Positions 8,301-23,807 of a stretch of DNA of 64,000 nucleotides are shown here, piece after piece. The position numbers and the translations under genes were made by a program. Each line of letters begins with the position of its first letter. Positions within the stretch are counted from its first letter, which is position 1. Where the stretch lies: positions 1 through 64,000 of the IMG/VR virus record IMGVR_UViG_3300042922_000542; one strand, written 5' to 3'. The notes beneath the pieces were generated by a model. It did not search any database. It had not been told where the DNA came from and saw only the letters and a program-made list of their open reading frames with translations.

Positions 8301-9107
8301 AATGGTAACATTATTTCGGTTGCATCATATTATTCGATAGATGGTATATTATGGCAAATGATGGATATTCTTATAGCACCTAGTTATGTTATGAATATGG
8401 GTGACGTTGCCGAATATTATAATGATGGCAAATGGATAAAGGTGAACGCATTACCGATAATGGGCGGAGGTTCTGATCCTGAATATCAATATTATCATTC
8501 CACAAATGGAATCGATTGGGATTATATTAATTTATTCGATATTCCTTATAATTATTTTAAATATATTTATTATGCGAATAACTTATGGGTCGCAAATATA
8601 TATATACTCAATGATAGTCAGGACGGATGGTATGGATGCACATGTTATTCAGAAGATGGTATAAATTGGGTAAAAAGTAATATGGGGGTTAATACAAGTT
8701 ATATGATACAGGATGAAATACAATGTTGTTACTATGCAAATAATATATGGGTAGCAGCTGGTATGATGGGAATATATTATTCTTATGATGGGAAAACGTG
8801 GCAACAAACTGCCAGAGATAACAACTCAATTTGGAACTTTCATATATGCTATTATATTGAAGATAGTCATACATGGATATGTAATGGTCGTTGGAACGAT
8901 GGTAATGCTACTCATGTTAATCGAGATACAGAATTGTTTTATTCGCATGATGGTAAAACTTGGCATTATGTTAACGAAATACCATTTGACAAAATAGATC
9001 GTATCGTATCATATGATGCTCATGATGGAGTTATCGTAGCAGGTGGAGTTAAAACTGTATTCTTTTCATCAGGTAATGAATTAAATTATCGACCAAAACT
9101 AGAATAA
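5361..9107 (+). CDS. Tail fibre / receptor-binding protein with Asp-box (BNR-like) repeats
   Basis: 1248 aa; His-rich fibre repeats (HxxDxxIHxT..E...WN, HINNINNPHSVT), then about 18 copies of YYSxDGxxW. Confidence 0.75.
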   Translation: MGKQIAKKIIQSRTYMDPDQRPIPDHDYYLTYPITTFDGVKKNDNDDSSNLTDEFELIDQKLALKQNQIPANNSGHIVTYTNEPGVIGTRPVVSSINLDPALRNNINIPTEAAVGALSDSKVNNRDFNTHVSDEIIHTSEYEKTNWNNMTPIGDFNIHTHDKDIHITPNERASWNAKANQSDLNLHINNINNPHSVTAAQINTYTKPEIDTKLLSIQTKFFNYLNIIWDQKLGIAKLVEYDAINWDPNYILGYNERLPDIGDPTGVYFALAPATNYLNNQTNDVIIYIKKPSMVWVEIGRQTLDPGDLVVRYPDTAMFVWMGGRFVELITRNSDSPDDPGGGLNEPMPPYTVKANNTNITTTPQDVKYDDILSKLISMMNPQDMADLIKPHLDIKASGDKDILGKRWIKSNFDSDANSDNVKEAIKTYYFNGIWLLYNHHKGIYYSTGGKYWMPTNVTDASIVYYYEENGLLYALSVLMSDMFDISLSLYYSTDGINWSEYKQNGGYNLMYQNGIWLSGARSYMREAQEGHAITDQYSGFGIRYSEDGINWINSNIASGILQKCYYYNNVWIAIMEYVGSSGQSLMFQVYYSRDGKFWSSGINIPSSDYEISIDVKDNVLFIFNISDTTYYSSDGIQWHNTNHDFGKCICTDDVWVASISYEGLYYSIDAGVSWNSTINTDIQDLDYNNNMWIVATNKNIYYSTDGINWTITNASPGSETYNYFDDIYYGNGTWIVRGYKKLCYSTDGVTWNDSTAIYNATSSLDMIECYGELWLANTSTGFYYSTNGINWTTIGITPSMFSTIYYENNMWLLFDNDNNVIYYSTDGILWSLCSIPEGILQYGIYHKNNMWFVIIMDDDGSDLMHLCQSTDGITWTLTNISANYINIKYVIDKWIVTTYNEIGLVSYYSLDGITWNNGPTTNFNYSSYYPANGMVVSWDNTGIKYSIDGEIFHPTNITDPIKMCWNEGGVWFATKIQISENGNIISVASYYSIDGILWQMMDILIAPSYVMNMGDVAEYYNDGKWIKVNALPIMGGGSDPEYQYYHSTNGIDWDYINLFDIPYNYFKYIYYANNLWVANIYILNDSQDGWYGCTCYSEDGINWVKSNMGVNTSYMIQDEIQCCYYANNIWVAAGMMGIYYSYDGKTWQQTARDNNSIWNFHICYYIEDSHTWICNGRWNDGNATHVNRDTELFYSHDGKTWHYVNEIPFDKIDRIVSYDAHDGVIVAGGVKTVFFSSGNELNYRPKLE

Positions 9108-11557: not shown

Positions 11558-11589
11558 AATAATGGGGGACAATCAAGTCCCCCATTATT
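11558..11589. terminator. Bidirectional terminator
   Basis: AATAATGGGGGAC-AATCAA-GTCCCCCATTATT between convergent genes. Confidence 0.85.
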
Positions 11590-11607: not shown

Positions 11608-11901
11608 TTAGCAATTGCATCCACGACTAGTACAAGAGCAGCCATCATTATCTTCAACTAATATCATTCCGCAGTTATTGACAAACGAAATATACAAATC
11701 CGATTTTTTATCAGATGTAGACGAAACGTAGCCCTTACTTAATTCTTGTCTTAATACACTTAGACGAGTTGTTATATCAACCCATTCATTCGTGAATGAT
11801 TCATGCACGCCAACAAATTGTTCAACCGCATTAGCACGCCCAATCAATTCTAGTGGCAATACATTTGTATCAATTAATTCATATTGAACTTTCTTAACCA
11901 T
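11608..11901 (-). CDS. Small accessory protein (TIGR04116-like) with Cys-rich tail
   Basis: 97 aa; 'EW..ITTRLSVLRQELSKGY...LYISFVNNCGMIL' and tail GCSCTSRGCNC; last gene of the cassette. Confidence 0.55.
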   Translation of the reverse strand: MVKKVQYELIDTNVLPLELIGRANAVEQFVGVHESFTNEWVDITTRLSVLRQELSKGYVSSTSDKKSDLYISFVNNCGMILVEDNDGCSCTSRGCNC

Positions 11902-11915
11902 TATATTTCTCCTGA

Positions 11916-13181
11916 TTAATAATTTATTTTTCTGAATGATCTCTGTTGATCTTCTCGATTCATAGGTTGAGGATATCCAATTGTAGTCGGTTCTGTATGA
12001 TATGATTTCTCTGAAATATCTGCAGATGTATTAGATTGTAAATACGTTGTACAATGTCCTACGCATGTACTAATGCATTTATCAGTACAATTATTAAAAC
12101 AATCTCTATTACAACTTGAGTCACACCACCAACCACATAAATTGGCACAATTAGAACAAGTACCCTGACATTTAACTGAGCATAAACCAATACACATACC
12201 CACACATGAGTAGCAAAGATCACTACAACCACCACATGAGTCAGTGCAATTATCATAACAATGATTCACACATTTATTTACGCATGTTTGAGTACAATAA
12301 ATATTACATGCTTGGCCACATTGAACCGAACATTGACTTGAACAAGGTCCACAATTAAATCCACAATTGTTAGCGCATGTTCTACATAATGATGAACATG
12401 CATTTGAACATAGTGCTGTACATGATTTACCAACACAATTAACACTACATGTATTTACACATGCACCCTTACTTGCACCGCATGATGAACGACAAGCTTC
12501 TAGATGACAACTCGTGTTACAATCCTTTTGACATAGACCGGTACACGAACCACCGCAATTTCCACATCCCGTTGATCCAGGCGGTTTAGCATCCTCTTGG
12601 GATGATGCATGACCATCACATGTTGTACATATACCAGTGTTTGCATTACAATCACTTGCACAATTTGTACAACCGCCACCACCAGAACTAGTAGTTGCAC
12701 ATTCTTCTCTACACGATGTTCCACATCCTGTGCATGCACCACTACAACCACTACAACCATCTCCAGTACTAGTGCCGCTACATCCTCCACCACAGGTACC
12801 ACCGCATCCACCTTCACATCCATTTCCACAACTAGAGCTACACATAGAACAGTCACCTGAACAACTTCCAGGGCAACTAGTATCTCCAGGATCTGGTGCA
12901 GCAGATGACGATCCTTTACAAGTACCAGTACAACCACTACACCCTCCACTGCATCCATTAGAACATGATCCGGACCCAGCATTACAAGTATCTCTACACA
13001 TACCTTTACATGTTGTACCACAACTATCAGAACTACAACCTGCACCGCATCTAGATTGACAAGATGTTCCACAACTACCACATCCAGTACCAATACTCTT
13101 TGTTGCTGTGGTACTACTAGAACTACTAGCAGCATCTTTTGCTTGTTTTATAGCACCTATTATTCCTGACAATAAACTCAT
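11916..13181 (-). CDS. CxxxC-repeat Cys-rich protein, putative radical SAM substrate
   Basis: 421 aa, about 78 Cys (hand count), mostly spaced CxxxC/CxxC; RBS AAGGTGAT. Confidence 0.85.
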   Translation of the reverse strand: MSLLSGIIGAIKQAKDAASSSSSTTATKSIGTGCGSCGTSCQSRCGAGCSSDSCGTTCKGMCRDTCNAGSGSCSNGCSGGCSGCTGTCKGSSSAAPDPGDTSCPGSCSGDCSMCSSSCGNGCEGGCGGTCGGGCSGTSTGDGCSGCSGACTGCGTSCREECATTSSGGGGCTNCASDCNANTGICTTCDGHASSQEDAKPPGSTGCGNCGGSCTGLCQKDCNTSCHLEACRSSCGASKGACVNTCSVNCVGKSCTALCSNACSSLCRTCANNCGFNCGPCSSQCSVQCGQACNIYCTQTCVNKCVNHCYDNCTDSCGGCSDLCYSCVGMCIGLCSVKCQGTCSNCANLCGWWCDSSCNRDCFNNCTDKCISTCVGHCTTYLQSNTSADISEKSYHTEPTTIGYPQPMNREDQQRSFRKINY

Positions 13182-13214
13182 TTATCAATCACCTTCTTTA
13201 CACAATGATCTGTA

Positions 13215-14852
13215 TCAAACACGTATACCCGTATTTGCATTACAATCTATTTTACATGTAGCTGTACAAGCACTAGTACAACCAAAACACGTTCCAGTAC
13301 ATGTTAAATTACATGATCCAGTACAACCATCACAAGCTGTACACCCATTTGAACATCCAGTGTCACAGTTACCACAATTATTACTGCAGGTTACAGTACA
13401 ATTATCGTAGCAACTATTTTTACAAGTACTGAAACATGACAATGTACATACACCCTCACATACACCAGCACAATCACCTGTACAATCTGCAACACAACCC
13501 TCTTTACACGATTGACCCTTTCCAGATTTATAACCACCATTATGTTCATTATCATTACTAATGCATCCACCAAAACAACTAGTTGAACAATATGTATTAC
13601 AAGTTGTAAAACATAATGCTGAGCATACTGAATCCCAACATGTCGTTTTTTTATTAGGATAATATTGACATGAGAATGAACATCCACTGCATGTATACGT
13701 TGATGATATTACTGTATTTTGGATAACTGCACTTGAGGCTGTCTGTCCACAATTATTACTACATCCGCTAGGGTTACCTGTAGATTTAATAGAAACTGTA
13801 TCAGCTCCTGCATTCAAACAAGATTTACCACCAATATCACTACATTTGGTTTTACATCCAGAATAACATTGTGTCGTACATCCTGTACATATATTACCAC
13901 AATCTGAATGACATGCATTACCGCATCTGCTCCAACATGTGGATGCACAACCTTCGGAACATTGATTATCACATGTTAGATAACATAAACCTGTACATGC
14001 TACATTACACAATCCTTTAGATCCTGTTGAAATTTGTCTTGATGGATATTCTGATCCTCTATTAGGGTTTCTAGGATTAGCTCCAAATCTAGATGCTGAA
14101 CTAATGCCACCTGTCACTTGATCAACTACTGTTTCATTTCGTTGATCGTCCTGAGTAATTATATGACGATGAACAATCGGTGAAACATATGGGTTTATCG
14201 GATGATGATCAATAACACCAGGACTTGCTCCATAATCATCATAGAAGTTAGTCTCATCAGGACCACTATGACCTGGTAATATTTCTTCACCATCATATTC
14301 TCCAGATGGATATTCTACTGGAACTGTTACGGTTTTACCATTATTTGCAATAGGGTATAAACCATATCCTGTATACATACCATTCGTAACTCCATTATTA
14401 GGGTCATATTTCTGAAAAGATTCAGTAACGGGCACATTTAAAATATCATTTTCAGCAGCTTCTATTTTTGTTGATATATCTTCAGGATCTCTAAACACTA
14501 AACCCGCAACCTCATCTCTGCCATAGAATAAATCTATGTCATGGATCTTAGATAAACCAACTAAATAGTTTTGTATTTCATCAACATCAATTCTAGCACT
14601 AGATGAATTAATATCTCCAACAGGATTATCTCCTTGCGCAGGATATTTGATATTTCTTGTAGGTTCTATGGATCCGGTAGATGGAGTATTAATGGTATAT
14701 GTTTTATCTGTGACTTCACTAGTCCTATCAGCTCCGACTGCAGGTGTAGTTAACGGATCCCACCATTTAAATGTTCCACGACGTTTAATCTCAGCATTTA
14801 ATTTATCCTTAATTGCATCAAATTCTGTTTTTGAATATAATTTATCATTCAC
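13215..14852 (-). CDS. Protein with Cys-free N-half and CxxxC-repeat C-half, putative radical SAM substrate
   Basis: About 545 aa from GTG 14852 (RBS GAGGTG); about 52 Cys, all in the C-half starting at GLCNVACTGLC. Confidence 0.85.
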   Translation of the reverse strand: MNDKLYSKTEFDAIKDKLNAEIKRRGTFKWWDPLTTPAVGADRTSEVTDKTYTINTPSTGSIEPTRNIKYPAQGDNPVGDINSSSARIDVDEIQNYLVGLSKIHDIDLFYGRDEVAGLVFRDPEDISTKIEAAENDILNVPVTESFQKYDPNNGVTNGMYTGYGLYPIANNGKTVTVPVEYPSGEYDGEEILPGHSGPDETNFYDDYGASPGVIDHHPINPYVSPIVHRHIITQDDQRNETVVDQVTGGISSASRFGANPRNPNRGSEYPSRQISTGSKGLCNVACTGLCYLTCDNQCSEGCASTCWSRCGNACHSDCGNICTGCTTQCYSGCKTKCSDIGGKSCLNAGADTVSIKSTGNPSGCSNNCGQTASSAVIQNTVISSTYTCSGCSFSCQYYPNKKTTCWDSVCSALCFTTCNTYCSTSCFGGCISNDNEHNGGYKSGKGQSCKEGCVADCTGDCAGVCEGVCTLSCFSTCKNSCYDNCTVTCSNNCGNCDTGCSNGCTACDGCTGSCNLTCTGTCFGCTSACTATCKIDCNANTGIRV

Positions 14853-14915
14853 ACTTATCACCTCAATCACATTTATATTTGCATTTATTTAATTTTAAAG
14901 AGTCTGCAAATTCAA

Positions 14916-16727
14916 TTATTGGTTTTCCAATACGGTAATTGTAGAACGAGCCACTATCATTTTTAATAATTTTAACTCTTCCTCATTAATAACCATCAAT
15001 GCCCATTCGTCGGGTAATTGTAATTTTCTTACTCCCAAATTATAATGTGGTTTCTTTATAGCTAACAGGTTCCAGTAATATACATTGGCTAAGTGTTCGG
15101 CAAACATTTGTAAACATATGAATTGAGTTCTCTTATTTGCAGTCCCATATGTTTGATGGCATAACCCACTACACCAAGAGCAAGAAGATCCAATTGGACA
15201 ATCATAACAAATATCATTTGATTGTGAACGCCTTGTTACACTATCCATCATCGACAATATTTCGGATCCTTCTTCTCTACCAACCATACCAGTATCAATA
15301 TGACCTATACATTGCTCTTTGCATTTCGTTCCAAGTGATGATGGCATATATCTAATACATGGATAAAATTTACCCTTGTAGTCTAGTGCCAACATTGATC
15401 CTAATCCTCCACACCAATTTTGATCCGAAGTGTGTTTAAGCCTAGTCTCAGGTTTATCATCGAATATAGCAATATATAGATGCTCTAAATTATTTTCCAG
15501 CAAGTAGTTCGCTAGTTTCTTTAATTGTTCATATTCTAGTGTAGCAGTTTCTTGTGTCCAAACATCTTCAAACACGCAGTTTAAATTGATAGATTCCATA
15601 TCCTCATTGATGAAATTAATAACTGAATCATATAAATATTTCATATTTTCTGGAGCCAATGTCATCTTTGAATTTCTTTCGGTAGTATGATATTTATTAA
15701 AATGATTTAATGCAAGAATATCGATATCATACGAGCCTTCACCATTAGGCTGGATTCTACATGAGTCTTGTAATTCTTTATTACCATCTATTGATATATT
15801 AAATGAAACATGTTTAGCATATTTTTTAAAGAAATCTTGCACGTCTCTATCAAAATATAACATCCCATTGGTACATATAGAAATTCTATGCATTGCAAAC
15901 CATGGATGGTTTAATTCATAGCATCTTTCTAAAAAATATTCATAAATCTTTTTGGTAAGATTAATTTCTAACAATGGGTCCCCACCAATAAACTCAATGA
16001 TTATTGCAGGTGAATTGTGTTTATTAATATAACTATATTCATCATTTAAAAGTTTATCGATAAATGCTTTAGCTGTTGGAAATTTCATTCTTCCACATGT
16101 TTTATTTATCTGATAACAATATGTGCAGGATAAATTACAATCCTCAGTTGTTTGGAATGTAAAGTTGTGTACATATATTGATGTATCCTTATTAGTAGGA
16201 TCTACTGTATCTTGAGTAAACAATTCAGGGTAAACTTTTTGAATGGCATCACTATAACTTTCAACATTAAATCTAAAAAATTGATTTGGCATTATATTAA
16301 ATACTTCATCATCCTTTATTTTATCATCAATATAATTTAAACAATTTTCATCATCAGATAATATTATTACATCAAATCCAATCTCTTGATTTTTGAAATC
16401 AATATGTTTAACAATTACCTCAGATATATTATCAATATTATATGAGGAAACTCCAGATGATTCGATTATATCATTTAAGAATACTGCAACTATTTCACAG
16501 AATCCATAACGTACCTCGTCCAAGATACTAGTAAGTTTTTCATGTAATTCCGGGATTTTATCTAGATCCTTATTATGGTCATACATATAATTTATTCTAA
16601 ATGATATCGCATCAGCTTCATATCGTAACCTGGTTGTTTTATGATACCCGAATGTCTGCATTTCAAATATATCGAATTGCTGATTGTATAATTTAATTTT
16701 TTTATATAATGCATTTGTCTCTTTCAT
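14916..16727 (-). CDS. Radical SAM/SPASM peptide maturase, CXXX-repeat target family (TIGR04115-like), with N-terminal extension
   Basis: CxxxCxxC (TEDCNLSCTYCYQ), IEFIGGDPLL, SIDG; SPASM (NWCGG..FYPCIRY..CYDCPIGSSCSWCSG..FIC); C-terminal LANVYYWN signature. Confidence 0.9.
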   Translation of the reverse strand: MKETNALYKKIKLYNQQFDIFEMQTFGYHKTTRLRYEADAISFRINYMYDHNKDLDKIPELHEKLTSILDEVRYGFCEIVAVFLNDIIESSGVSSYNIDNISEVIVKHIDFKNQEIGFDVIILSDDENCLNYIDDKIKDDEVFNIMPNQFFRFNVESYSDAIQKVYPELFTQDTVDPTNKDTSIYVHNFTFQTTEDCNLSCTYCYQINKTCGRMKFPTAKAFIDKLLNDEYSYINKHNSPAIIIEFIGGDPLLEINLTKKIYEYFLERCYELNHPWFAMHRISICTNGMLYFDRDVQDFFKKYAKHVSFNISIDGNKELQDSCRIQPNGEGSYDIDILALNHFNKYHTTERNSKMTLAPENMKYLYDSVINFINEDMESINLNCVFEDVWTQETATLEYEQLKKLANYLLENNLEHLYIAIFDDKPETRLKHTSDQNWCGGLGSMLALDYKGKFYPCIRYMPSSLGTKCKEQCIGHIDTGMVGREEGSEILSMMDSVTRRSQSNDICYDCPIGSSCSWCSGLCHQTYGTANKRTQFICLQMFAEHLANVYYWNLLAIKKPHYNLGVRKLQLPDEWALMVINEEELKLLKMIVARSTITVLENQ

Positions 16728-16794: not shown

Positions 16795-16824
16795 GATAAT
16801 GGATGGGCAATCCCATCCATTATC
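16795..16824. terminator. Terminator hairpin between the two rSAM cassettes
   Basis: GATAATGGATGGG-CAAT-CCCATCCATTATC. Confidence 0.8.
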
Positions 16825-16825
16825 A

Positions 16826-17662
16826 CTATCTATTATTTGATATGTATTCTTGATATATCATGGATAGTTCTTGATCAACTTTATTCCGCTCAGTTAATTT
16901 TGTATCATCATATTTTTGCTCGGATAACAATTGACCATTACAGTCCTTCGTTGAAATTACATAATGTGAATTGACATTAACGGTATTAATATTCTCAATA
17001 GTGATTTCATTATCGATAAAATAATTATCATAGATTAATTGTTTCATAATACTCATATAATGATCTCTAATAATATTGAAATCATCACTGACAAATCCAA
17101 ATTCAATTCGTTTAAATCCAATAGAAACTAAATTATTGATACTTTCTTTAAGATATCCAATATTAGATTTATTTAAAGTACAATGTGCAATTAGGTTAAT
17201 CCCACTCTTTATGAATTTGCCTATATTGTCTATTATATAATCATATGATCCTTTCCCGTTTTTAAGTATACGATTAATATTGTGCGATAATTTATTACCA
17301 TCTATTGAAATACATAATAAAATATTATATTTTTTAATGGTATTAATAATTTCATCTGAATACATCATACCGTTAGTTGAAGTTACAAATTTAAATTTAT
17401 ATTCAGAATAATGATCAATAATATATTTACATATTTGATTTAGTCGATCTATAAATAAAAATGGTTCACCGCCTAATAATTCAACAGTAATCGACCTACC
17501 CGTAATATGCAACATACTTTCATCGAATATCCGAATTATATCATCTATGGTACTATCTGATTCAATATCACTATCAAGCATATTATTATATACATAACAA
17601 TATTTACATCTCATATTGCAGAGCTTAGTAATATACATATTTATATGTCGACATTCAGACAT
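16826..17662 (-). CDS. Radical SAM protein lacking a SPASM domain
   Basis: TKLCNMRCKYCYV, LLGGEPFL, TNG, ISIDG; no C-terminal Cys cluster; ATG overlaps upstream TAA. Confidence 0.85.
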   Translation of the reverse strand: MSECRHINMYITKLCNMRCKYCYVYNNMLDSDIESDSTIDDIIRIFDESMLHITGRSITVELLGGEPFLFIDRLNQICKYIIDHYSEYKFKFVTSTNGMMYSDEIINTIKKYNILLCISIDGNKLSHNINRILKNGKGSYDYIIDNIGKFIKSGINLIAHCTLNKSNIGYLKESINNLVSIGFKRIEFGFVSDDFNIIRDHYMSIMKQLIYDNYFIDNEITIENINTVNVNSHYVISTKDCNGQLLSEQKYDDTKLTERNKVDQELSMIYQEYISNNR

Positions 17663-18783
17663 TAATCATCATCCTTCAAATTAAATTTAATACGAATATT
17701 GTCATATCCAATTTTATTAATAAACATTTCAGATGCATCATAAAAAAGTTTTATTGCTTTACATACACCATCTATGGGTTCACATATATTTTTCTTACCA
17801 TGTTCCATTATTGCTGCAAAACATTGACCATAGCATACGCCATATAATTCACAATTTCTACATTTTGGAGATATATCATGTGAAAAGTTTTTATATATAT
17901 TTGCAATATTATTGGTTTCATCAATATCAGTAAATATGGAACCAAGTTTAGTATGTTCAAAGCGGTTATTGAAAAAACGTTGACAAGGATATATGTCACC
18001 ATTGGGTGCTAATGCAATTGTAGATGAACCAGCTGAACAGAAGTAGGTTCTACCGTGGGCTTTACATCTATATGGTAATAGTAAGCCAGTATCAAGAAAT
18101 GGAGTTTCCGAGTAAAATTTATCAACTAGAAATTCTACATATTCAATATAAAAATTCTTTAATCTCTCCAATTGCACATCATTCCAATCGCAATCTCGGA
18201 CAATACTCAAATTAATACGCCTGAATCCATCTTTGATGTAATCTTTAATACCATCTAGGACATAATCAATATTATCAGGTGATATCATAAATTTAAATAT
18301 TTTAGAGCTGATTGGTCTGTTATTAGCTTCACAATATAGTGTAGCACCTTTTATACAGTCATCATAGCTACCTTTACCATTTGGATATACCCGACATCTA
18401 TCATGGCTGCTTCTCCCACCATCTAGGGACATACTAATCCCTATTTCATTATTCTTGAGATATTCAACCTTCTCTTTATTTAATAATGTCAAATTACTTG
18501 TAGTCATAATTGCAATATTTACATCTGGTCGCATTTTTTTTACTTCATTGATATTATCAACTATTTTACAGAATTTTTCCCATTCCATTATAGCCTCTCC
18601 ACCGAATAAATCAATATGAAGAGATTTTATATCATTTTTAACGATAATATTATTAAGAAATACGGGCAAATATTCAATAACATCATCCGATATTGTTAAC
18701 CCGTTTGTTTTATTAACATAGCAATATTTACAACGCAAATTGCATTTCTCAGTTACAATAATAATGATTGTACTAATTTTCAT
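17662..18783 (-). CDS. Radical SAM/SPASM maturase
   Basis: TEKCNLRCKYCYV, FGGE, SLDG; SPASM CSAG..GDIYPCQRF..CRNCELYGVCYGQC..VC. Confidence 0.92.
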   Translation of the reverse strand: MKISTIIIIVTEKCNLRCKYCYVNKTNGLTISDDVIEYLPVFLNNIIVKNDIKSLHIDLFGGEAIMEWEKFCKIVDNINEVKKMRPDVNIAIMTTSNLTLLNKEKVEYLKNNEIGISMSLDGGRSSHDRCRVYPNGKGSYDDCIKGATLYCEANNRPISSKIFKFMISPDNIDYVLDGIKDYIKDGFRRINLSIVRDCDWNDVQLERLKNFYIEYVEFLVDKFYSETPFLDTGLLLPYRCKAHGRTYFCSAGSSTIALAPNGDIYPCQRFFNNRFEHTKLGSIFTDIDETNNIANIYKNFSHDISPKCRNCELYGVCYGQCFAAIMEHGKKNICEPIDGVCKAIKLFYDASEMFINKIGYDNIRIKFNLKDDD

Positions 18784-18794
18784 TTTTTATACCT

Positions 18795-19208
18795 CTAATT
18801 ATCACCTATTACCAAACCACATTGATCACAATCACATGCACATCTATCACAATTGCAAGAACATCTATCGCAATCACAATCACAATTATCGCAATTACAT
18901 TGACATGTATTATTGTATATTGTCGTAGCAGCTATACTGGCATTATTAAAAACTGTAGCAAGTATATATTTGCCTTGTTCAAAATTTATCAATGAACTAA
19001 GATCTGCCTTGGGATATACCGCTGAATGACCATTTGCAGCAACTAAATTATTTTTAATTGATGTAAACAAAGTGCTAGTTATTAAATTACCTTTCACGGC
19101 TCTTTCTGTATTTGCAGGTTGACCAAGTCGTATTCGAGTTTGATCAACCGATGCAGCAACAACATTTGCATCATCCGCTAACATTTTCTGACCTTTAACT
19201 ATTGCCAA
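18795..19208 (-). CDS. Small protein with C-terminal (CxCxCDx)4 repeat, putative rSAM substrate
   Basis: Likely TTG start 19208 after GGGTGA; tail CQCNCDN-CDCDCDR-CSCNCDR-CACDCDQ-C. Confidence 0.85.
   Translation of the reverse strand: MAIVKGQKMLADDANVVAASVDQTRIRLGQPANTERAVKGNLITSTLFTSIKNNLVAANGHSAVYPKADLSSLINFEQGKYILATVFNNASIAATTIYNNTCQCNCDNCDCDCDRCSCNCDRCACDCDQCGLVIGDN
18829..18905 (-). repeat. Imperfect 21-bp tandem repeat encoding CxCxCDx heptads
   Basis: Four 7-codon units visible in both DNA and protein. Confidence 0.75.
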
Positions 19209-19518
19209 TGTTATCACCCACTTTTACAATAAAATCAATAGACTCATATAAAATATCACTGATTGAGAAGTGATATATATTCTTTACAATATTACTTATA
19301 GATTTAACGATGGTACCATTTACCAATACCTGAACTGATTTTACTGGTTTATCCCTAAAATATTGATTTAAAACTGTACCTGTTGTTGGAACAACATCAT
19401 TTATGATACGTAATTGAGTTAATTCACTCCCAACATTCATAAAAAAATTTATCCCCGCAGTTTTATCAATTATAACATCTTCATCAATATATTCAATTTT
19501 TATTTTTACACCTTCCAT
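19195..19518 (-). CDS. Small beta-rich hypothetical protein in rSAM cassette
   Basis: 107 aa, RBS AGGAGG; resembles the neighbouring ORF. Confidence 0.7.
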   Translation of the reverse strand: MEGVKIKIEYIDEDVIIDKTAGINFFMNVGSELTQLRIINDVVPTTGTVLNQYFRDKPVKSVQVLVNGTIVKSISNIVKNIYHFSISDILYESIDFIVKVGDNIGNS

Positions 19519-19549
19519 AATTTAACCCTCCTGTTTATAATAATTAATC

Positions 19550-19951
19550 TTATTCATAATTAAAATGGAGTTCGGAATTAGATAAATATATTCGATCTAT
19601 TATTATATCATCCATAATATTTATACCATATGAGATACTCTTTACGCCTAATATTTCATCACATATTTCATCTCCATTAAACATTTGAACATTGATTACT
19701 TTTCGATCCATCAATGCTTGACGAATTATATCAAATTTTTCATGAAAGTCGTTAACTGTGACATTTCTAATGATTAATGCATTTGATATCATTTTGCTTA
19801 AACTATTTGCCACTGTGAGACTATCATCTCGGTATCGTACGGCCGATACTACCGGGGATTGAGGTAGGGATGTTGGATCTATATTAATATTAGGCACCAC
19901 ATCTAATGTCATCGTCACCATTGGTTCGATTATTATTTTTACACGTGTCAT
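19550..19951 (-). CDS. Small beta-rich hypothetical protein in rSAM cassette
   Basis: Likely start MTRVK at 19951 (RBS AAGGGG); overlaps the 3' end of the upstream rSAM gene. Confidence 0.65.
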   Translation of the reverse strand: MTRVKIIIEPMVTMTLDVVPNINIDPTSLPQSPVVSAVRYRDDSLTVANSLSKMISNALIIRNVTVNDFHEKFDIIRQALMDRKVINVQMFNGDEICDEILGVKSISYGINIMDDIIIDRIYLSNSELHFNYE

Positions 19952-21224
19952 TGCATGAACACCCCTTTTCATTTATCATACGAGAAACTTTTTCTGTTAT
20001 TAATAATTCATGTAATTCTAATAAATGTTGTAGCGTTATTATTTGACCTTCCGTAAAATTATCAGTTAGAAGTCTACCCATTTCTTGCAAAACTGTAATT
20101 GAGACTTCGTGATCTCTATGAATTTTACCAAATAGTCGTTCATATACATAAATCGATAATTCCATTTCAACCTCTAATAATTTACAATACTTAGGAAAAC
20201 CATATGCGATATTTCCATTTTCTATATAATTAATAGCCATACAGCTCTTGCAGTTATAATTCTTACATTCAGAACATGCCTTGTATCCAGTCATATATTT
20301 TTTATACATCTCTTCATATGGTGCACATTTTAATGTATTTATACCATTAAATACATCACCAATTATAGTATCTGGGTCATTCATGAATGCATGGCATGGA
20401 TATATATAACCATCTGGAGCTACAGTGCAAAATGATACACCCGCACCGCATGTTTTATCGGCATGTCGCTCTTTATATACCATTGATGAAAATTGTTTAT
20501 AATTCCCTCCACTATTTTCACAATCCTCAATGATTGCATTGGCAATATGGGTATATTGCTCTCTAAATATAACATAATCATTTTCATCCCAATTCTCTTC
20601 ATGAAGAGGCATAAACCATATCTTATCAAATCTTAAGATATTTTTAAAGAAGATGTATGACTCATGTGCATATGGTAATGTTGCTTTGGTTATAACACTA
20701 TGCACTGATAATTTATTAGATGGAATGTCTAATTTATCAAATAATGCTCTAAGTTTTTTTATCGTCTCTATTATATTATGAGATGAACCATTACCCGCAT
20801 GATCAATTCTTTGCAGATCATTAATCCTAGGAATTGAATCAAATGATAATTGAATTGAAAAACTTTCAGGATTATTTACCCACCAATTGGTTAGAAATTG
20901 TTCGTATTCATTATTGTATAATACACCATTTGTTATCAATTCACTATTATATTTCAAACCATGTTTTTTACATTGATCCATAGCATAATTGAATATGTGG
21001 TTCATAGTATTTATATTGAGTGTAGGCTCCCCTCCAAAATATGACACACTAATACTTGTTTTATTATTAACTAAAGCATCATGGATAAGTAAATCAATTG
21101 TTTTTTCACCAATCTCATTACTCATAAATTTACCCTTTGATGAATTATTTTTTTCAAAACAATATTTACAATTAAGATTACATGTGTCTGTTAATAGTAT
21201 CGATGCACTCGTAAATGATGACAT
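19890..21224 (-). CDS. Radical SAM/SPASM maturase
   Basis: TDTCNLNCKYCFE, YFGGEP, ITNG; SPASM CGAG..GYIYPCHAF..CSECKNYNCKSC..YC. Confidence 0.92.
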   Translation of the reverse strand: MSSFTSASILLTDTCNLNCKYCFEKNNSSKGKFMSNEIGEKTIDLLIHDALVNNKTSISVSYFGGEPTLNINTMNHIFNYAMDQCKKHGLKYNSELITNGVLYNNEYEQFLTNWWVNNPESFSIQLSFDSIPRINDLQRIDHAGNGSSHNIIETIKKLRALFDKLDIPSNKLSVHSVITKATLPYAHESYIFFKNILRFDKIWFMPLHEENWDENDYVIFREQYTHIANAIIEDCENSGGNYKQFSSMVYKERHADKTCGAGVSFCTVAPDGYIYPCHAFMNDPDTIIGDVFNGINTLKCAPYEEMYKKYMTGYKACSECKNYNCKSCMAINYIENGNIAYGFPKYCKLLEVEMELSIYVYERLFGKIHRDHEVSITVLQEMGRLLTDNFTEGQIITLQHLLELHELLITEKVSRMINEKGCSCNDTCKNNNRTNGDDDIRCGA

Positions 21225-21285: not shown

Positions 21286-21320
21286 TAAATAGTTAATCCG
21301 ATTGTCGGATTAACTATTTA
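21286..21320. terminator. Hairpin at end of tail-fibre gene
   Basis: TAAATAGTTAATCCGA-TTG-TCGGATTAACTATTTA. Confidence 0.7.
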
Positions 21321-23634
21321 AAATTAATATTTTTACTCTTTGAATATCTTCCGTATCTTTATTCTCTAATGCCTTACCTATTATAGATCCTGGAATACTT
21401 GATACTGAACTTTTTCCAACGCCTTTGATAGACGATGTTGTTATTAAATCTCCAGCTTTAACCTTGCCGGTAATATATGCAGATACTCTTCCTGTTAATC
21501 CTATAGGTATATTTCTTTCTAAGTTTTCCTCAGTGGTATATCCTTCTTCCAAACCTAATAAATATCCATATGTATCAGATACTACACCAACAACCAATGT
21601 CGAATATTCACCAGTGCTTTTTCGATAATTACCAGTTTCTGGATTTAATTCTATAATATCGCCAGGTTTAAAATCTTCAGACATATCATCCTTTTTAAAT
21701 AACTCGGCAACGTCACCCCATACTGCATTCTGAACTAAAGAGCCTGTTATGGTACCGGTAACTGTTAAATTACCAGTGATCGTTCCGCCAGTGAGTGGTA
21801 AATATGGATGGGTGTGTCCATTATCAGATTTATTATTCCATGCTGCTATTTGAGCATCTGTTACAAATCTATTAGTAGTATTTTGAGTTATAATCGATGC
21901 TGGGTGGCTCGCAGGATGTTGATATGAATATGGAGCGAGTTTAGATGCCAAAGCTTGTAGTTGTTCCACCGTGGATCTACTACTAATAGAATCGATTATA
22001 GTTGCAAATGATACATCAGTTGGTGCTGCAGCAGCACTAGTCATATTTCCTTTAATAGAAAATGCAGGTATATCTGCTAATTTTATATTCGTTACAGCTT
22101 TATCTCGTATTTTTGTAGTTAATATAGATAAATCTGCAATATTATAATCAGTTACAGCATTCATTTGAATTTTATGATTATTTACACAACCCTCACCCAA
22201 TTCATCGGAAGTTATAGTAAATGCAGCAATCTTTATACCAGTAACAGCCCTATCTGCAATAGCTGGCGTTTTAACGGACCCTTGCAATATATGATAATCG
22301 CGTATTGCATTACCAGCTATCTTTGAAGCAATGATCGTCCCATCTAATAAGTGATTATACATTACATTATTATCAGCTATATGTTCGGCAAGAATTGCAC
22401 CTGCTTTAATATCAACACTGTCCGCAACGGCTTTGTATGCTAAGTTTTGTAATCCTGTAACGTGTATTTCATCAACTACCGTACTGACATCACCATTTAT
22501 CATGTATGATATAGAACCATTATTTGAACCAGATCCTATCTCTATAGATTGTATAAATCTGCCATCAGCTTCAGCTTTACTGTATACATCTGTAGCCTGT
22601 GGTAGTGCTGCCACATTTATTGATAGACCGTTAGGTGTTTCAGAAAAATAAGTTGCATCATATTTTGATATTGTGAAATCCTGTATATCCCACCAATAAT
22701 TATCACCATCATGTTTACATGCAGCAATTGCACTATAATTAGAATTTTCTTTATTTTTAATCAGATATATATGTCTTTGTAATAATGGCGATGCCATCGG
22801 TAAATCTGAAACTTTATTTACAATATCAATAAATTCAACGTAGTCAGTTAAATCAGGTCCAACTATGGTATCAACATATGATGTCACGAAGTCAACTACT
22901 GCTTTAGATGATGGATATTTAACATCATCATAGTTTGTAGTATGTGATATAGTCACTGATTTGTTAGCAATATTTTCTTTAGCTGCAAATAATGGTCCAT
23001 GTGAAAATGGATTTGTCAAATGTGTTGTATAATCATTTAATAAATTAACCATTCTGGCATCTAGTAAATCAATACTATCGTTTAATTCAGTTTGTACATT
23101 AGATAATGCATTACGTATATCACTATGTGCTGTATTGCTAGTATCATGAATACCAATAATATTATTAATTGTATTTGAAACACTACCATCCGAATCTAAT
23201 TGATCTATTGTAACGTTGTGAGGATTATTAAAATTTGCAAGATGTGCGGTTAATGATGATAGGTCTATATTAAAATTATAATTTTCTAATATCGACATTA
23301 CTGCATTTCTCTGATTATATGATAATGGCTTCTCCAAATCAGATGTATTGTTAACCCGACCGAGTCCTATATCTTCAGATGTAATATTAATATCGCCGTA
23401 CATCCCATTTACAGATGTTACTGGGAATGTAATATATCCAATACCACCTTCTTTTATTTCTTCACGTATATCATCTAGTATTTGACGTAATGTTATTTCG
23501 TTCGCATCCTGTTGGTCATATATAGCATCTAATACACTTCTAGGCCAAATTATATCGGCCATACTAGTACTCGGATTATTCTCATCATCAAATACAATTT
23601 GATCGCGGATAACTTTATTCCTAATATTATTCAT
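21310..23634 (-). CDS. Tail fibre protein with C-terminal intramolecular-chaperone (peptidase G2-like) domain
   Basis: PVTSVNG..G, GLGRVNNTSDLEKP, NPHNVT, 10-aa IxxxAVTxxK repeats, HPASHPAS, HTHPYLPLTGGTITG; C-terminal DVAELF..PGD..VVGVVSD..GRV..GDL..IIGKALE; start ATG 23634 with AGGAGG. Confidence 0.85.
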   Translation of the reverse strand: MNNIRNKVIRDQIVFDDENNPSTSMADIIWPRSVLDAIYDQQDANEITLRQILDDIREEIKEGGIGYITFPVTSVNGMYGDINITSEDIGLGRVNNTSDLEKPLSYNQRNAVMSILENYNFNIDLSSLTAHLANFNNPHNVTIDQLDSDGSVSNTINNIIGIHDTSNTAHSDIRNALSNVQTELNDSIDLLDARMVNLLNDYTTHLTNPFSHGPLFAAKENIANKSVTISHTTNYDDVKYPSSKAVVDFVTSYVDTIVGPDLTDYVEFIDIVNKVSDLPMASPLLQRHIYLIKNKENSNYSAIAACKHDGDNYWWDIQDFTISKYDATYFSETPNGLSINVAALPQATDVYSKAEADGRFIQSIEIGSGSNNGSISYMINGDVSTVVDEIHVTGLQNLAYKAVADSVDIKAGAILAEHIADNNVMYNHLLDGTIIASKIAGNAIRDYHILQGSVKTPAIADRAVTGIKIAAFTITSDELGEGCVNNHKIQMNAVTDYNIADLSILTTKIRDKAVTNIKLADIPAFSIKGNMTSAAAAPTDVSFATIIDSISSRSTVEQLQALASKLAPYSYQHPASHPASIITQNTTNRFVTDAQIAAWNNKSDNGHTHPYLPLTGGTITGNLTVTGTITGSLVQNAVWGDVAELFKKDDMSEDFKPGDIIELNPETGNYRKSTGEYSTLVVGVVSDTYGYLLGLEEGYTTEENLERNIPIGLTGRVSAYITGKVKAGDLITTSSIKGVGKSSVSSIPGSIIGKALENKDTEDIQRVKILILNS

Positions 23635-23807
23635 TGTTATCATCCTCCTATATGTCATAAAATATAATTATTACTCTAATTTATATTAAACAAATGGTTT
23701 GAGTGCTGATGAAGAAAAGCAAAAAAATGAATTATTTAGATTATATATTATTCTATAAATATACCATAAAATCATATGGTATAATAAATAAAATGGAGGC
23801 ATCGCAG

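What the first reader, a model, noticed from the sequence alone, without database searches (positions are those of the whole stretch)
11608..16727. Cassette A: CXXX-family maturase with two CxxxC-array proteins far larger than RiPP precursors
Seen: a unit bounded by hairpins at 16795 and 11558, in the order maturase, 545-aa protein (about 52 Cys), 421-aa protein (about 78 Cys), accessory protein. The two targets share the motifs CTGLC, GKSC, CYDNCT and DCNANTGI, which suggests duplication or common recognition sites. Typical RiPP precursors are under about 100 aa. Inference: dozens of cross-links per chain, or a long polynuclear metal-binding rod.
Basis: partly seen in the sequence, partly recalled or inferred. 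Interest (0 to 1): 0.85.

Follow-up and report, generated by a model that had tools for sequence, protein, structure and literature searches.

The report
Split phage cysteine-array protein with maturase
An uncultivated jumbo phage encodes a radical-SAM enzyme next to a protein, here split into two genes, that carries about 130 cysteines spaced every fourth residue; the pair belongs to a widespread, apparently undescribed phage family and may be the largest enzyme-cross-linked protein substrate of its kind.

Summary
Between two 13-bp hairpins lie a 603-aa radical-SAM/SPASM enzyme (best match TIGR04115, 344 bits against a cutoff of 350), a 545-aa protein with 52 Cys, a 421-aa protein with 78 Cys, and a 97-aa ORF. 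The CxxxC spacing is far beyond chance.

The two "targets" are two halves of one gene. More than 100 relatives, on 220-300 kb phage contigs, encode a single protein of about 890 aa. It has an N-domain, 85 near-invariant Cys columns and a C-terminal beta domain. The shared DCNANTGI motif marks the duplicated break point. CTGLC is the conserved start of the array.

The enzyme orthologue sits on the same contig in 16 of 16 cases, usually adjacent. Inteins occur in both genes.

The same module is common in smaller phages. 61 of 64 loci inspected, from 282 IMG/VR loci holding a relative of the enzyme, carry arrays of 68-574 aa. The neighbours scanned were mostly tail-fibre or tail genes.

Best explanation: the enzyme cross-links the Cys lattice through thioethers (chemistry inferred, untested) in a probably virion- or fibre-associated protein. 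CrpC/CrpA (2026) is an experimental precedent for protein substrates.

This is a new variant of a known kind. Interest 0.68.

The parts
16795..16824 (.). Upstream 13-bp palindromic hairpin. It is terminator-like on both strands and separates cassette B from rSAM603.
   Evidence: sequence
14916..16727 (-). rSAM603, a radical-SAM/SPASM enzyme of the CXXX-repeat-target type. It has a conserved N-terminal extension of about 185 aa. The CX3CX2C motif is at C197/C201/C204. The invariant SPASM Cys are C439, C457, C507, C510, C516, C519 and C538. An AGGAGG Shine-Dalgarno sequence precedes the ATG.
13215..14852 (-). C545, the N-terminal half of the split Cys-array protein. It has an N-domain of about 280 aa followed by a CxxxC array of 52 Cys. 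It aligns with residues 1-555 of the fused 890-aa homologue P0016. Start is the GTG at 14852; the mechanical ORF starts at 14870.
14775..14840 (-). N-terminal helix of C545 (residues 5-26, LYSKTEFDAIKDKLNAEIKRRG). It is shared with the N-termini of small-phage CXXX-array proteins and is a candidate recognition ('leader') element.
   Evidence: helix 8-24, pLDDT about 89; hhalign probability 84%, E 8e-6
13242..14009 (-). CxxxC array of C545. It begins with the conserved entry motif C-N-V-A-C-T-G-L-C and ends at the duplicated junction DCNANTGI.
13182..13214 (-). Split junction. After the TGA stop of C545 come nine codons, then TGA TAA in the same frame. A GAAGGTGAT Shine-Dalgarno sequence lies before the ATG of C421. 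This is a true gene split, not read-through.
12570..13181 (-). C421 residues 1-204. This is a lineage-specific extra Gly/Ser/Cys array of about 41 Cys with no counterpart in the fused homologues. It holds the second copy of DCNANTGI (residues 177-184).
11916..12569 (-). C421 residues 205-421, the conserved C-terminal half of the array. It aligns with P0016 residues 533-748 and includes CGGSCTGLC at residues 209-217. The C-terminal beta domain of about 130 aa found in the fused forms is absent.
11608..11901 (-). acc97, a small ORF at the conserved position downstream of the Cys protein. It is 43% identical to the 95-aa ORF of L011. It resembles the 92-99-aa ORFs of other relatives only in position and weakly at the N-terminus. 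It is not TIGR04116. It ends in CSCTSRGCNC.
11558..11589 (.). Downstream 13-bp palindromic hairpin between convergent genes; a bidirectional terminator-like site.
21310..23658 (-). 782-aa tail-fibre-like protein. In relatives its orthologue lies directly upstream of the rSAM603 orthologue, so it is the ancestral neighbour of the cassette.

Best explanation
Cassette A is the local, split version of a module that is conserved throughout one lineage of uncultivated jumbo phages of about 250-300 kb. The module has three genes: a dedicated radical-SAM/SPASM enzyme, one large Cys-array protein, and a small ORF of 92-99 aa.

The Cys-array protein is normally about 890 aa. It consists of an N-domain, about 89 Cys in a fixed CxxxC lattice, and a C-terminal beta domain. 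In this phage and a few relatives the gene has broken in the middle of the lattice into two separately translated genes (545 aa and 421 aa). The break point is duplicated, an extra Gly/Ser/Cys array has been added, and the C-terminal domain has been lost.

Proposed mechanism, step by step:

- Shown: the enzyme has the fold and cluster ligands of RiPP-type SPASM maturases. Its closest solved relative is the thioether synthase CteB.
- Inferred: it binds the conserved N-terminal helix and N-domain of the substrate.
- Inferred: it enters the array at the conserved CxxACTGLC motif.
- Inferred: it works along the lattice and turns Cys thiols into intramolecular thioether (ranthionine-type) cross-links. 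This would give a covalently stapled, reduction-proof rod or lattice.
- Inferred from gene neighbourhood only: the product is part of, or assembled with, the tail-fibre or virion apparatus. Radical-SAM cross-links could replace disulfides, which cannot form in the reducing cytoplasm of a probably anaerobic host.

My confidence in the separate steps:

- split gene of a conserved family: 0.95
- the enzyme acts on the arrays: 0.75
- the product is a thioether: 0.5
- structural or fibre-associated role: 0.35
For: Split gene:
- C545 residues 7-546 align with P0016 1-555, and C421 residues 205-417 align with P0016 533-748.
- The junction carries TGA, then TGA TAA, then its own Shine-Dalgarno sequence.
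- Independent samples show the same split: L011 (544+448 aa) and L012 (722+385 aa).

Conservation:
- 86 fused homologues share 85 Cys columns at 90% or more and hold a constant 84-92 Cys each.
- The N-domain profile finds only this family among 1.84 billion representatives and nothing in 185,579 species genomes.

Linkage to the enzyme:
- The enzyme orthologue is adjacent in L004, L007, L011 and L012 and in 12 of 15 further IMG/VR loci. It is on the same contig in 16 of 16.
- Inteins occur in both genes.

Enzyme identity:
- TIGR04115 at 344 bits.
- NCBI gives that name to a 58%-identical orthologue.
- phmmer's best PDB hit is CteB, 5wgg.
- The AF2 model has pTM 0.86, and its best Foldseek hits are CteB, ChlB, SuiB and SkfB.
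- The CX3CX2C and SPASM Cys are invariant.

Wider family:
- 282 IMG/VR loci encode a relative of the enzyme. L047's enzyme scores 506 bits on TIGR04115.
- 61 of 64 inspected carry an adjacent CxxxC-array ORF.
- These ORFs share the N-helix and the ACTGLC entry motif with C545.

Structural context:
- The fibre-gene orthologue lies directly upstream in relatives.
- Of 10 flanking proteins scanned from small-phage loci, 5 hit tail-fibre or tail PHROGs, 1 hit endolysin, and 4 hit neither. In L001, by my reading of the ORFs, the array gene directly follows a fibre-like gene.

Chemical precedent:
- CrpC installs ranthionine cross-links on the Cys-rich protein CrpA and depends on the substrate's N-terminal domain (PMC13692751).

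Anaerobic host hint:
- NrdD lies next to the module in L011.
Against: - No experimental or expression data exist for any member, and no isolate carries the protein.
- No inter-Cys position carries a dominant acceptor residue of the kind PapB uses (CX3D). The positions are a Ser/Thr/Gly/Asn mix, so the site and even the type of modification are open.
- The enzyme scores 5.6 bits below the TIGR04115 cutoff. The canonical partners TIGR04119 and TIGR04116 are absent from the cassette.
- C421 has no N-helix, so how it would be recognised after the split is unexplained.
- In 3 of 16 genomes the enzyme and the substrate gene lie about 40-85 kb apart.
- No PHROG, Pfam, PDB or BFVD match ties the N- or C-domain to a known virion protein.
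- The region next to tail-fibre genes is also where phages carry accessory 'moron' genes.
- AF2 gives no fold for the array: pLDDT is 21-40.
Confidence: 0.5

Rival explanations
1. The lattice is a metal or iron-sulfur binding scaffold, that is, a polynuclear rod, store or electron wire. The Cys stay as thiolate ligands. The radical-SAM enzyme would modify only a few sites or serve another role.
For: - Cys density is 9-18%, and the Cys positions and number are invariant.
- AF2 cannot fold the array without cofactors.
- The bacterial CXXX target in L002 carries what I read as a twin-arginine signal, and what I read as TatA and TatC genes lie next to it. By my own knowledge, that route exports pre-folded, often cofactor-bearing proteins. 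I ran no signal or Tat predictor.
- The authors of the CrpA study suggest a metal-related function.
Against: - CxxxC is not a known Fe-S or metallothionein spacing. This rests on my own knowledge; no Pfam or NCBIfam metal-binding family matched.
- The strict co-inheritance with a CteB/PapB-like maturase (16 of 16 contigs) needs a role for that enzyme.
- CrpA, the one tested Cys-rich protein with such a partner, is cross-linked.
Confidence: 0.2
2. It is an accessory ('moron') module rather than a virion part. The modified Cys-rich protein would be a released or intracellular effector, for example an antimicrobial, a host-takeover factor or an anti-defence factor. Alternatively it is a multi-core precursor that is cut into many small thioether peptides.
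For: - In small phages the module lies between tail-fibre and lysis genes, a classic moron site.
- The enzymes are RiPP-type maturases.
- The length and number of arrays vary greatly between phages.
Against: - No protease, transporter or immunity gene was seen in the cassette, and the N-termini as read show no obvious signal peptide. No predictor was run.
- In the jumbo lineage the lattice is not a repeat of identical cores. It is a fixed sequence of about 400 residues with many invariant non-Cys positions and flanking globular domains.
- The family is retained on all 16 related contigs, and both genes host inteins. By my own knowledge, inteins favour conserved, essential genes.
Confidence: 0.17
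3. The arrays simply form disulfide ladders after lysis, giving an oxidatively hardened extracellular protein. The neighbouring radical-SAM enzyme would act on something else.
For: The Cys are dense and regularly spaced. The enzyme gene is unlinked, 40-85 kb away, in 3 of 16 genomes.
Against: - Co-occurrence on the same contig is 16 of 16, and adjacency to an array holds in 61 of 64 other phage loci.
- Anaerobic markers argue against an oxidising setting: NrdD in L011 and O2-labile radical-SAM enzymes.
- Enterobacterial jumbo phages that have related radical-SAM genes but no Cys-rich neighbour do not have this protein either.
Confidence: 0.08

Closest known systems
CXXX-repeat radical-SAM target system (NCBIfam TIGR04114/TIGR04117 targets, TIGR04115 rSAM, TIGR04119 maturase, TIGR04116 associated protein). 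It was defined in silico; from my own memory, by Haft and Basu 2011, a paper not held in the library.
   Same: The enzyme's best model is TIGR04115. The substrate is a CxxxC lattice that starts with the same entry motif: CNGSCYGLC in the bacterial L002 target and CNVACTGLC here. A small third ORF of about 90-100 aa is present.
   Different: - The system is phage-encoded.
- The substrate is 5-20 times longer and has globular N- and C-domains in place of what I read as a Tat signal.
- No TIGR04119 or TIGR04116 homologue is present.
- The enzyme carries a 185-aa N-extension and scores just under the cutoff.
- In this window the substrate gene is split.
CrpC/CrpA of Methanococcus voltae (TIGR04463 family; PMC13692751, 2026)
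   Same: A SPASM radical-SAM enzyme sits next to a Cys-rich protein rather than a peptide. The Cys repeats are C-terminal to a recognition domain. The structure prediction for the Cys region has low confidence. The function is unknown.
   Different: - The enzyme belongs to a different family: TIGR04463 scores only 41.7 bits here.
- CrpA uses 17-residue repeats with C-X-X-Q/D, not a CxxxC lattice.
- CrpA is 28.8 kDa, against about 95 kDa for a fused homologue of about 890 aa (my estimate from its length).
- CrpA is archaeal and chromosomal, not viral.
PapB/freyrasin and CteB/SCIFF thioether (ranthipeptide) maturases
   Same: PapB is the second-best NCBIfam hit at 149 bits. CteB is the closest solved structure by both sequence and fold. 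The SPASM domain has the full Cys set.
   Different: Their substrates are peptides of about 40-50 aa with 1-6 cross-links and defined acceptors (Asp in CX3D; Thr). These substrate details are from my own knowledge. Here no fixed acceptor is evident.
QhpD/QhpC and anaerobic sulfatase-maturating enzymes. These are SPASM enzymes that act on proteins.
   Same: They set a precedent for SPASM enzymes modifying Cys in folded-protein-sized substrates. TIGR03906 scores 85 bits and TIGR03942 52 bits.
   Different: They modify one to three sites per substrate and have enzymatic rather than repetitive targets (from my own knowledge). The sequence relationship to rSAM603 is distant.

Membership tests
CXXX-repeat rSAM system (NCBIfam TIGR04114-04119) | Radical-SAM enzyme reaching the TIGR04115 cutoff (350 bits) | tested here: inconclusive
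   The score is 344.4 bits, E 1e-102, over positions 3-359 of the 359-position model, and this is by far the best family. That is 5.6 bits short of the cutoff. NCBI gives a 58%-identical orthologue (P0158) this name. Small-phage relatives pass: L047 scores 506 bits.
CXXX-repeat rSAM system (NCBIfam TIGR04114-04119) | Adjacent target protein made of Cys-Xaa-Xaa-Xaa repeats | tested here: met
   39 of 51 and 54 of 77 Cys intervals are exactly 4 residues, against 5.2 and 8.1 in shuffles. The homologues carry precomputed, faint PF27846 tSAM_targ_Cxxx_rpt hits. hmmscan of TIGR04114/04117 reported nothing for C551 and C421 themselves.
CXXX-repeat rSAM system (NCBIfam TIGR04114-04119) | TIGR04119 'CXXX repeat peptide maturase' partner | tested here: not met
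   There is none in cassette A. rSAM444 of the neighbouring cassette B gives only a sub-threshold 61.5 bits against a cutoff of 150.
CXXX-repeat rSAM system (NCBIfam TIGR04114-04119) | TIGR04116 'CXXX repeat peptide modification system protein' partner | tested here: not met
   acc97 has no NCBIfam hit at E<=1 and no BLAST similarity to the TIGR04116 member of L002. Eight small ORFs from small-phage modules also miss the model.
SPASM-domain radical-SAM peptide/protein maturases | CX3CX2C radical-SAM motif plus a C-terminal 7-Cys SPASM region, and a fold like solved members | tested here: met
   C197/C201/C204 and C439, C457, C507, C510, C516, C519 and C538 are invariant in 53 orthologues. The AF2 model has pTM 0.86. 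Foldseek gives CteB at E 7e-16, followed by ChlB, SuiB and SkfB.
Thioether (ranthionine/sactionine) cross-linked products | A -2 Da change per modified Cys, loss of thiol reactivity, and identification of the acceptor carbon | not testable with these tools
   This needs mass spectrometry of co-expressed proteins. Here there is only analogy to CteB, PapB and CrpC.
Classical RiPP precursor | Short precursor (about <100 aa) with a leader and a core, plus a leader protease and/or exporter in the cluster | tested here: not met
   The substrates are 545 and 421 aa, or about 890 aa when fused. No protease or transporter family was found in the cassette. A leader-like N-helix is present.
Phage tail fibre / virion structural protein | Sequence or fold similarity to known fibre or virion proteins, or detection in virions | tested here: not met
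   C551 and C421 have no PHROG or Pfam hit. Foldseek found no significant PDB or BFVD match for the N- and C-domains. The only link is neighbourhood to fibre genes. Virion detection cannot be tested here.

The most novel reading that the evidence does not exclude
This would be a virus-encoded radical-SAM enzyme that staples one of the phage's own virion proteins with tens to more than a hundred thioether bridges. The result would be an enzymatically built 'chain-mail' rod in the fibre apparatus, serving as an anaerobe's substitute for disulfides. It would be the most heavily cross-linked ribosomal product known and the first radical-SAM-matured viral structural protein.
Probability: 0.25. Interest if true: 0.9.

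Novelty: new variant of a known kind. Interest (0 to 1): 0.68.

Why it matters
Radical-SAM thioether chemistry has been studied almost only on short peptides. The first demonstration on a Cys-rich protein dates from September 2026 (PMC13692751).

This locus points to a large phage-borne branch of the uncharacterised CXXX-repeat system. I could find no paper on that branch. Its substrates are proteins of 200-900 aa with up to about 130 Cys. The branch is conserved as a core feature of a jumbo-phage lineage and lies repeatedly beside tail-fibre genes in smaller phages.

If the lattice is cross-linked, three things follow:
- the size range of RiPP-like modification grows by an order of magnitude;
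- phages gain a new way to harden proteins without oxygen;
- a defined enzyme-substrate pair becomes available, with a candidate recognition helix and entry motif, for making hyper-stapled protein scaffolds.

If the lattice instead binds metals, it would be a new kind of viral metalloprotein.

Tried and rejected
- **Stop-codon read-through or recoding joining C545 and C421.** Rejected. The gap is in frame but holds TGA, then TGA TAA, and C421 has its own Shine-Dalgarno sequence.
- **acc97 as the detached C-terminal beta domain of the fused proteins.** Rejected. hhalign against A1 finds nothing.
- **acc97 or the small-phage small ORFs as TIGR04116.** No hit.
- **C421 carrying its own N-helix.** No similarity: score 15 against shuffles of 14.9.
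- **The same system in the enterobacterial jumbo phages (CR5, SPLA5c) that share PHROG 1802 enzymes.** Their neighbours are not Cys-rich.
- **Nucleotide or protein matches in GenBank phages.** None for the locus or for C551. Only the enzyme matches, distantly.
- **Fold of the array.** The AF2 model had low confidence there, and Foldseek PDB and BFVD searches gave nothing significant.
- **Remote homology of the N-domain.** PDB profile search, ESM Atlas and the 1.84-billion representative search returned only the family itself.
- **A fixed acceptor residue between Cys.** None found.
- **Literature.** Searches for 'CXXX repeat', TIGR04115, jumbo phage plus radical SAM, and ranthipeptide plus phage found nothing on this.
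- **Sequencing runs.** Only one DNA run holds the window, labelled soil metagenome and probably its source, so no expression test was possible.
- I removed those rows and did not send them to any other remote job.


Full report
**What the window is**

The window has about 30% G+C. It encodes phiKZ-type multisubunit RNA polymerase beta pieces, a large terminase, thymidylate synthase, DHFR, several 'virion structural' PHROGs and fibre-like proteins. It is part of a 246-kb IMG/VR contig. It is therefore from an uncultivated jumbo phage. No GenBank phage matches the locus at nucleotide level, and none encodes the first Cys protein.

**The observation**

A minus-strand unit lies between two perfect 13-bp hairpins at 16795-16824 and 11558-11589. 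It encodes four proteins.

- A 603-aa radical-SAM enzyme.
- A Cys-array protein. The mechanical ORF is 551 aa, but the Shine-Dalgarno sequence and the homologues support a GTG start that gives 545 aa.
- A 421-aa Cys-array protein.
- A 97-aa ORF.

The Cys counts are 52 and 78. Of the intervals between Cys, 39 of 51 and 54 of 77 are exactly four residues, against about 5 and 8 in shuffles. The four shared motifs are present.

**The enzyme**

The best family is TIGR04115, 'radical SAM peptide maturase, CXXX-repeat target family', at 344.4 bits against a cutoff of 350. PapB follows at 149 bits. The closest solved relative by sequence is the thioether synthase CteB.

An AF2 model built on 53 orthologues is confident (pTM 0.86). 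Its best fold matches are CteB, ChlB, SuiB and SkfB. The CX3CX2C motif and seven SPASM Cys are invariant.

A 185-aa N-terminal extension is conserved in all jumbo-phage orthologues. It is absent from the small-phage and bacterial enzymes. The model predicts strand-helix-helix-helix-strand-strand-helix at pLDDT of about 80-97. I could not test whether this is an RRE-like recognition domain.

**The two 'targets' are one gene**

A search with the N-domain of the first protein returned more than 120 clusters. Nearly all are about 870-900 aa and lie on contigs of 220-300 kb.

These proteins are collinear with C545 followed by the C-terminal half of C421. C545 residues 7-546 align with P0016 1-555. 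C421 residues 205-417 align with P0016 533-748. The fused proteins then carry a further beta-rich domain of about 130 aa, which the window lacks.

C421 residues 1-204 form an extra Gly/Ser/Cys array with no counterpart in the fused proteins. DCNANTGI is the last motif of C545 and recurs at C421 residues 177-184, so it marks a duplicated break point.

The 33-nt gap between the two genes is in frame. It contains TGA, then TGA TAA, and C421 has its own ribosome-binding site. The split is therefore real and is not read-through. Independent samples show equivalent splits: L011 (544+448 aa) and L012 (722+385 aa).

**A fixed lattice, not low complexity**

In 86 fused homologues at 49-71% identity, 85 Cys columns are at least 90% conserved and each protein holds 84-92 Cys. 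Many non-Cys positions are invariant too, for example the island Y-P-N-K-x-T-x-C-W-D.

The positions between Cys are rich in Ser, Thr, Gly and Asn. None is dominated by one residue, so no PapB-like CX3D acceptor is evident.

AF2 models the N-domain (pLDDT 65-89) and the C-domain (67-86). For the 400-residue lattice it gives pLDDT 21-40 and no secondary structure. Foldseek finds nothing significant in PDB or BFVD. The authors of the CrpA study report the same low confidence for their Cys-rich region.

**Linkage and distribution**

The order fibre-like gene, rSAM, Cys protein, small ORF is conserved in L004, L007, L011 and L012. On the other strand, the order 100-aa ORF, 329-aa 'virion structural' protein, 5'-3' exonuclease and a fibre-like protein of more than 1000 aa is also conserved.

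Among 15 further IMG/VR loci, 12 have the enzyme within 6 kb. In the other three the orthologue lies about 40-85 kb away on the same contig. Co-occurrence is therefore 16 of 16.

Many orthologues of the enzyme carry Hint or LAGLIDADG inteins, and two Cys proteins carry inteins inside the lattice. By my own knowledge, inteins favour conserved, important genes.

The N-domain profile finds only 27 representative clusters among 1.84 billion proteins. The significant ones inspected all belong to this family; the few weakest hits are unrelated repetitive proteins. It finds nothing in 185,579 species genomes.

In this window a block of three more radical-SAM genes and a CxC-tailed protein (16826-21224) has been inserted between the fibre gene and rSAM603. 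It is absent from the relatives examined.

**The wider phage family**

The enzyme profile retrieves 282 IMG/VR loci. In 61 of 64 inspected, mostly on 30-150-kb contigs, a CxxxC-array ORF of 68-574 aa (median 359, up to 86 Cys) lies beside a 440-480-aa enzyme, usually with an ORF of about 90-125 aa between them. The one such enzyme I scanned, L047's, is a bona fide TIGR04115 member at 506 bits.

These array proteins share three things with C545.

- An N-terminal helix of the form x-x-L-K-x-K-I-x-x-E-x-x-R-R. hhalign gives probability 84%, E 8e-6. The pairwise score against the array protein of L001 (a GenBank fecal-phage contig) is 49, against shuffles of 21.9+-4.2.
- The array entry motif C-x-x-A-C-T-G-L-C. 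This also appears, as CNGSCYGLC, in the canonical bacterial target of L002. By my reading, that protein has a twin-arginine signal instead of an N-domain.
- A recurring neighbourhood. Of 10 flanking proteins scanned from these loci, 5 hit tail-fibre or tail PHROGs, 1 hit endolysin and 4 hit neither. In L001 the array gene directly follows a fibre-like gene, and that gene's C-terminus matches the C-terminus of the window's 782-aa fibre protein.

**Interpretation**

I commit to the following. rSAM603 is the dedicated maturase of the Cys lattice. It recognises the N-helix and N-domain, enters at the ACTGLC motif and converts Cys into intramolecular thioether cross-links. The product is probably associated with the fibre or virion apparatus.

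- Shown: the identity and fold of the enzyme, the split-gene history, the conservation, the linkage, and the shared helix and entry motif.
- Inferred: substrate recognition, the chemistry, the number of cross-links and the structural role.

Experimental precedent for a SPASM enzyme cross-linking a Cys-rich protein through its N-terminal domain is CrpC/CrpA (PMC13692751). That paper does not mention phages or CXXX arrays.

The rivals are a metal or Fe-S scaffold, an accessory or effector module (or a multi-core precursor), and simple disulfide ladders. None is excluded. I weight them at 0.20, 0.17 and 0.08.

**Novelty**

The CXXX-repeat system exists as NCBIfam and Pfam models, and PGAP already names some orthologues. 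Membership of the 'kind' is therefore known in silico.

I found no paper on phage CXXX arrays or on this jumbo-phage protein. The apparently new points are these:
- a phage-borne branch with protein-sized substrates;
- an 890-aa, 89-Cys core protein of a jumbo-phage lineage;
- its split form in this window;
- the candidate recognition helix and entry motif.

My verdict is a new variant of a known kind.

Noticed in passing
window 16826-21224 (-): This is 'cassette B'. It holds three further radical-SAM genes: 444 aa (PapB/SCIFF-like), 373 aa (PapB-like with SPASM) and 278 aa (no SPASM). It also holds two small ORFs and a 140-aa protein that ends in 13 Cys spaced CxC/CxxC. Residues 42-60 of that protein resemble the N-helix of phage CXXX targets. 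The block has no counterpart in four related phages, so it looks like an insertion between the fibre gene and rSAM603.
   Followed up: partly
L007 7100-9973; L012 2991-6380; proteins P0255, P0258 and many entries: Inteins (Hint, LAGLIDADG) interrupt many orthologues of the radical-SAM enzyme. In two cases they interrupt the Cys lattice itself, inserted directly before a lattice Cys.
   Followed up: partly
window 5361-9107 (+): A 1248-aa fibre-like protein carries 11 copies of a YYSxDGxxW motif that resembles Asp-box/BNR repeats. That suggests a beta-propeller head. No Pfam hit.
   Followed up: no
L045-L108 (IMG/VR loci): Some small-phage modules carry two array genes in tandem (for example L045, L051, L072, L081). 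Some arrays have no N-domain at all (L052, L072, L081, L085).
   Followed up: partly
protein P0257 (1564 aa): One family member has an insertion of about 700 aa, acidic and repetitive with scattered CxC motifs, between the lattice and the C-terminal domain.
   Followed up: no
window 12531-12557 (-), C421 residues 209-217: CGGSCTGLC in the second half resembles the array entry motif. The fused homologues have a different sequence at that point (CTSMC in P0016). It might be a secondary entry site acquired after the split.
   Followed up: no
window 19890-19972: The ORF list shows an 83-nt overlap between the 3' end of the 444-aa radical-SAM gene and the 140-aa ORF downstream of it. The true start of the latter is probably further in.
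   Followed up: no
L009, L010 (Cronobacter phage CR5, Salmonella phage SPLA5c): Enterobacterial jumbo phages carry paired radical-SAM genes of the same PHROG (1802) but have no Cys-rich neighbour. Their substrate is therefore something else.
   Followed up: partly
window 12001-14000: G+C rises to 0.39 and GC skew falls to -0.32 over the array genes. The likely cause is their Cys/Gly/Ser codon content.
   Followed up: no
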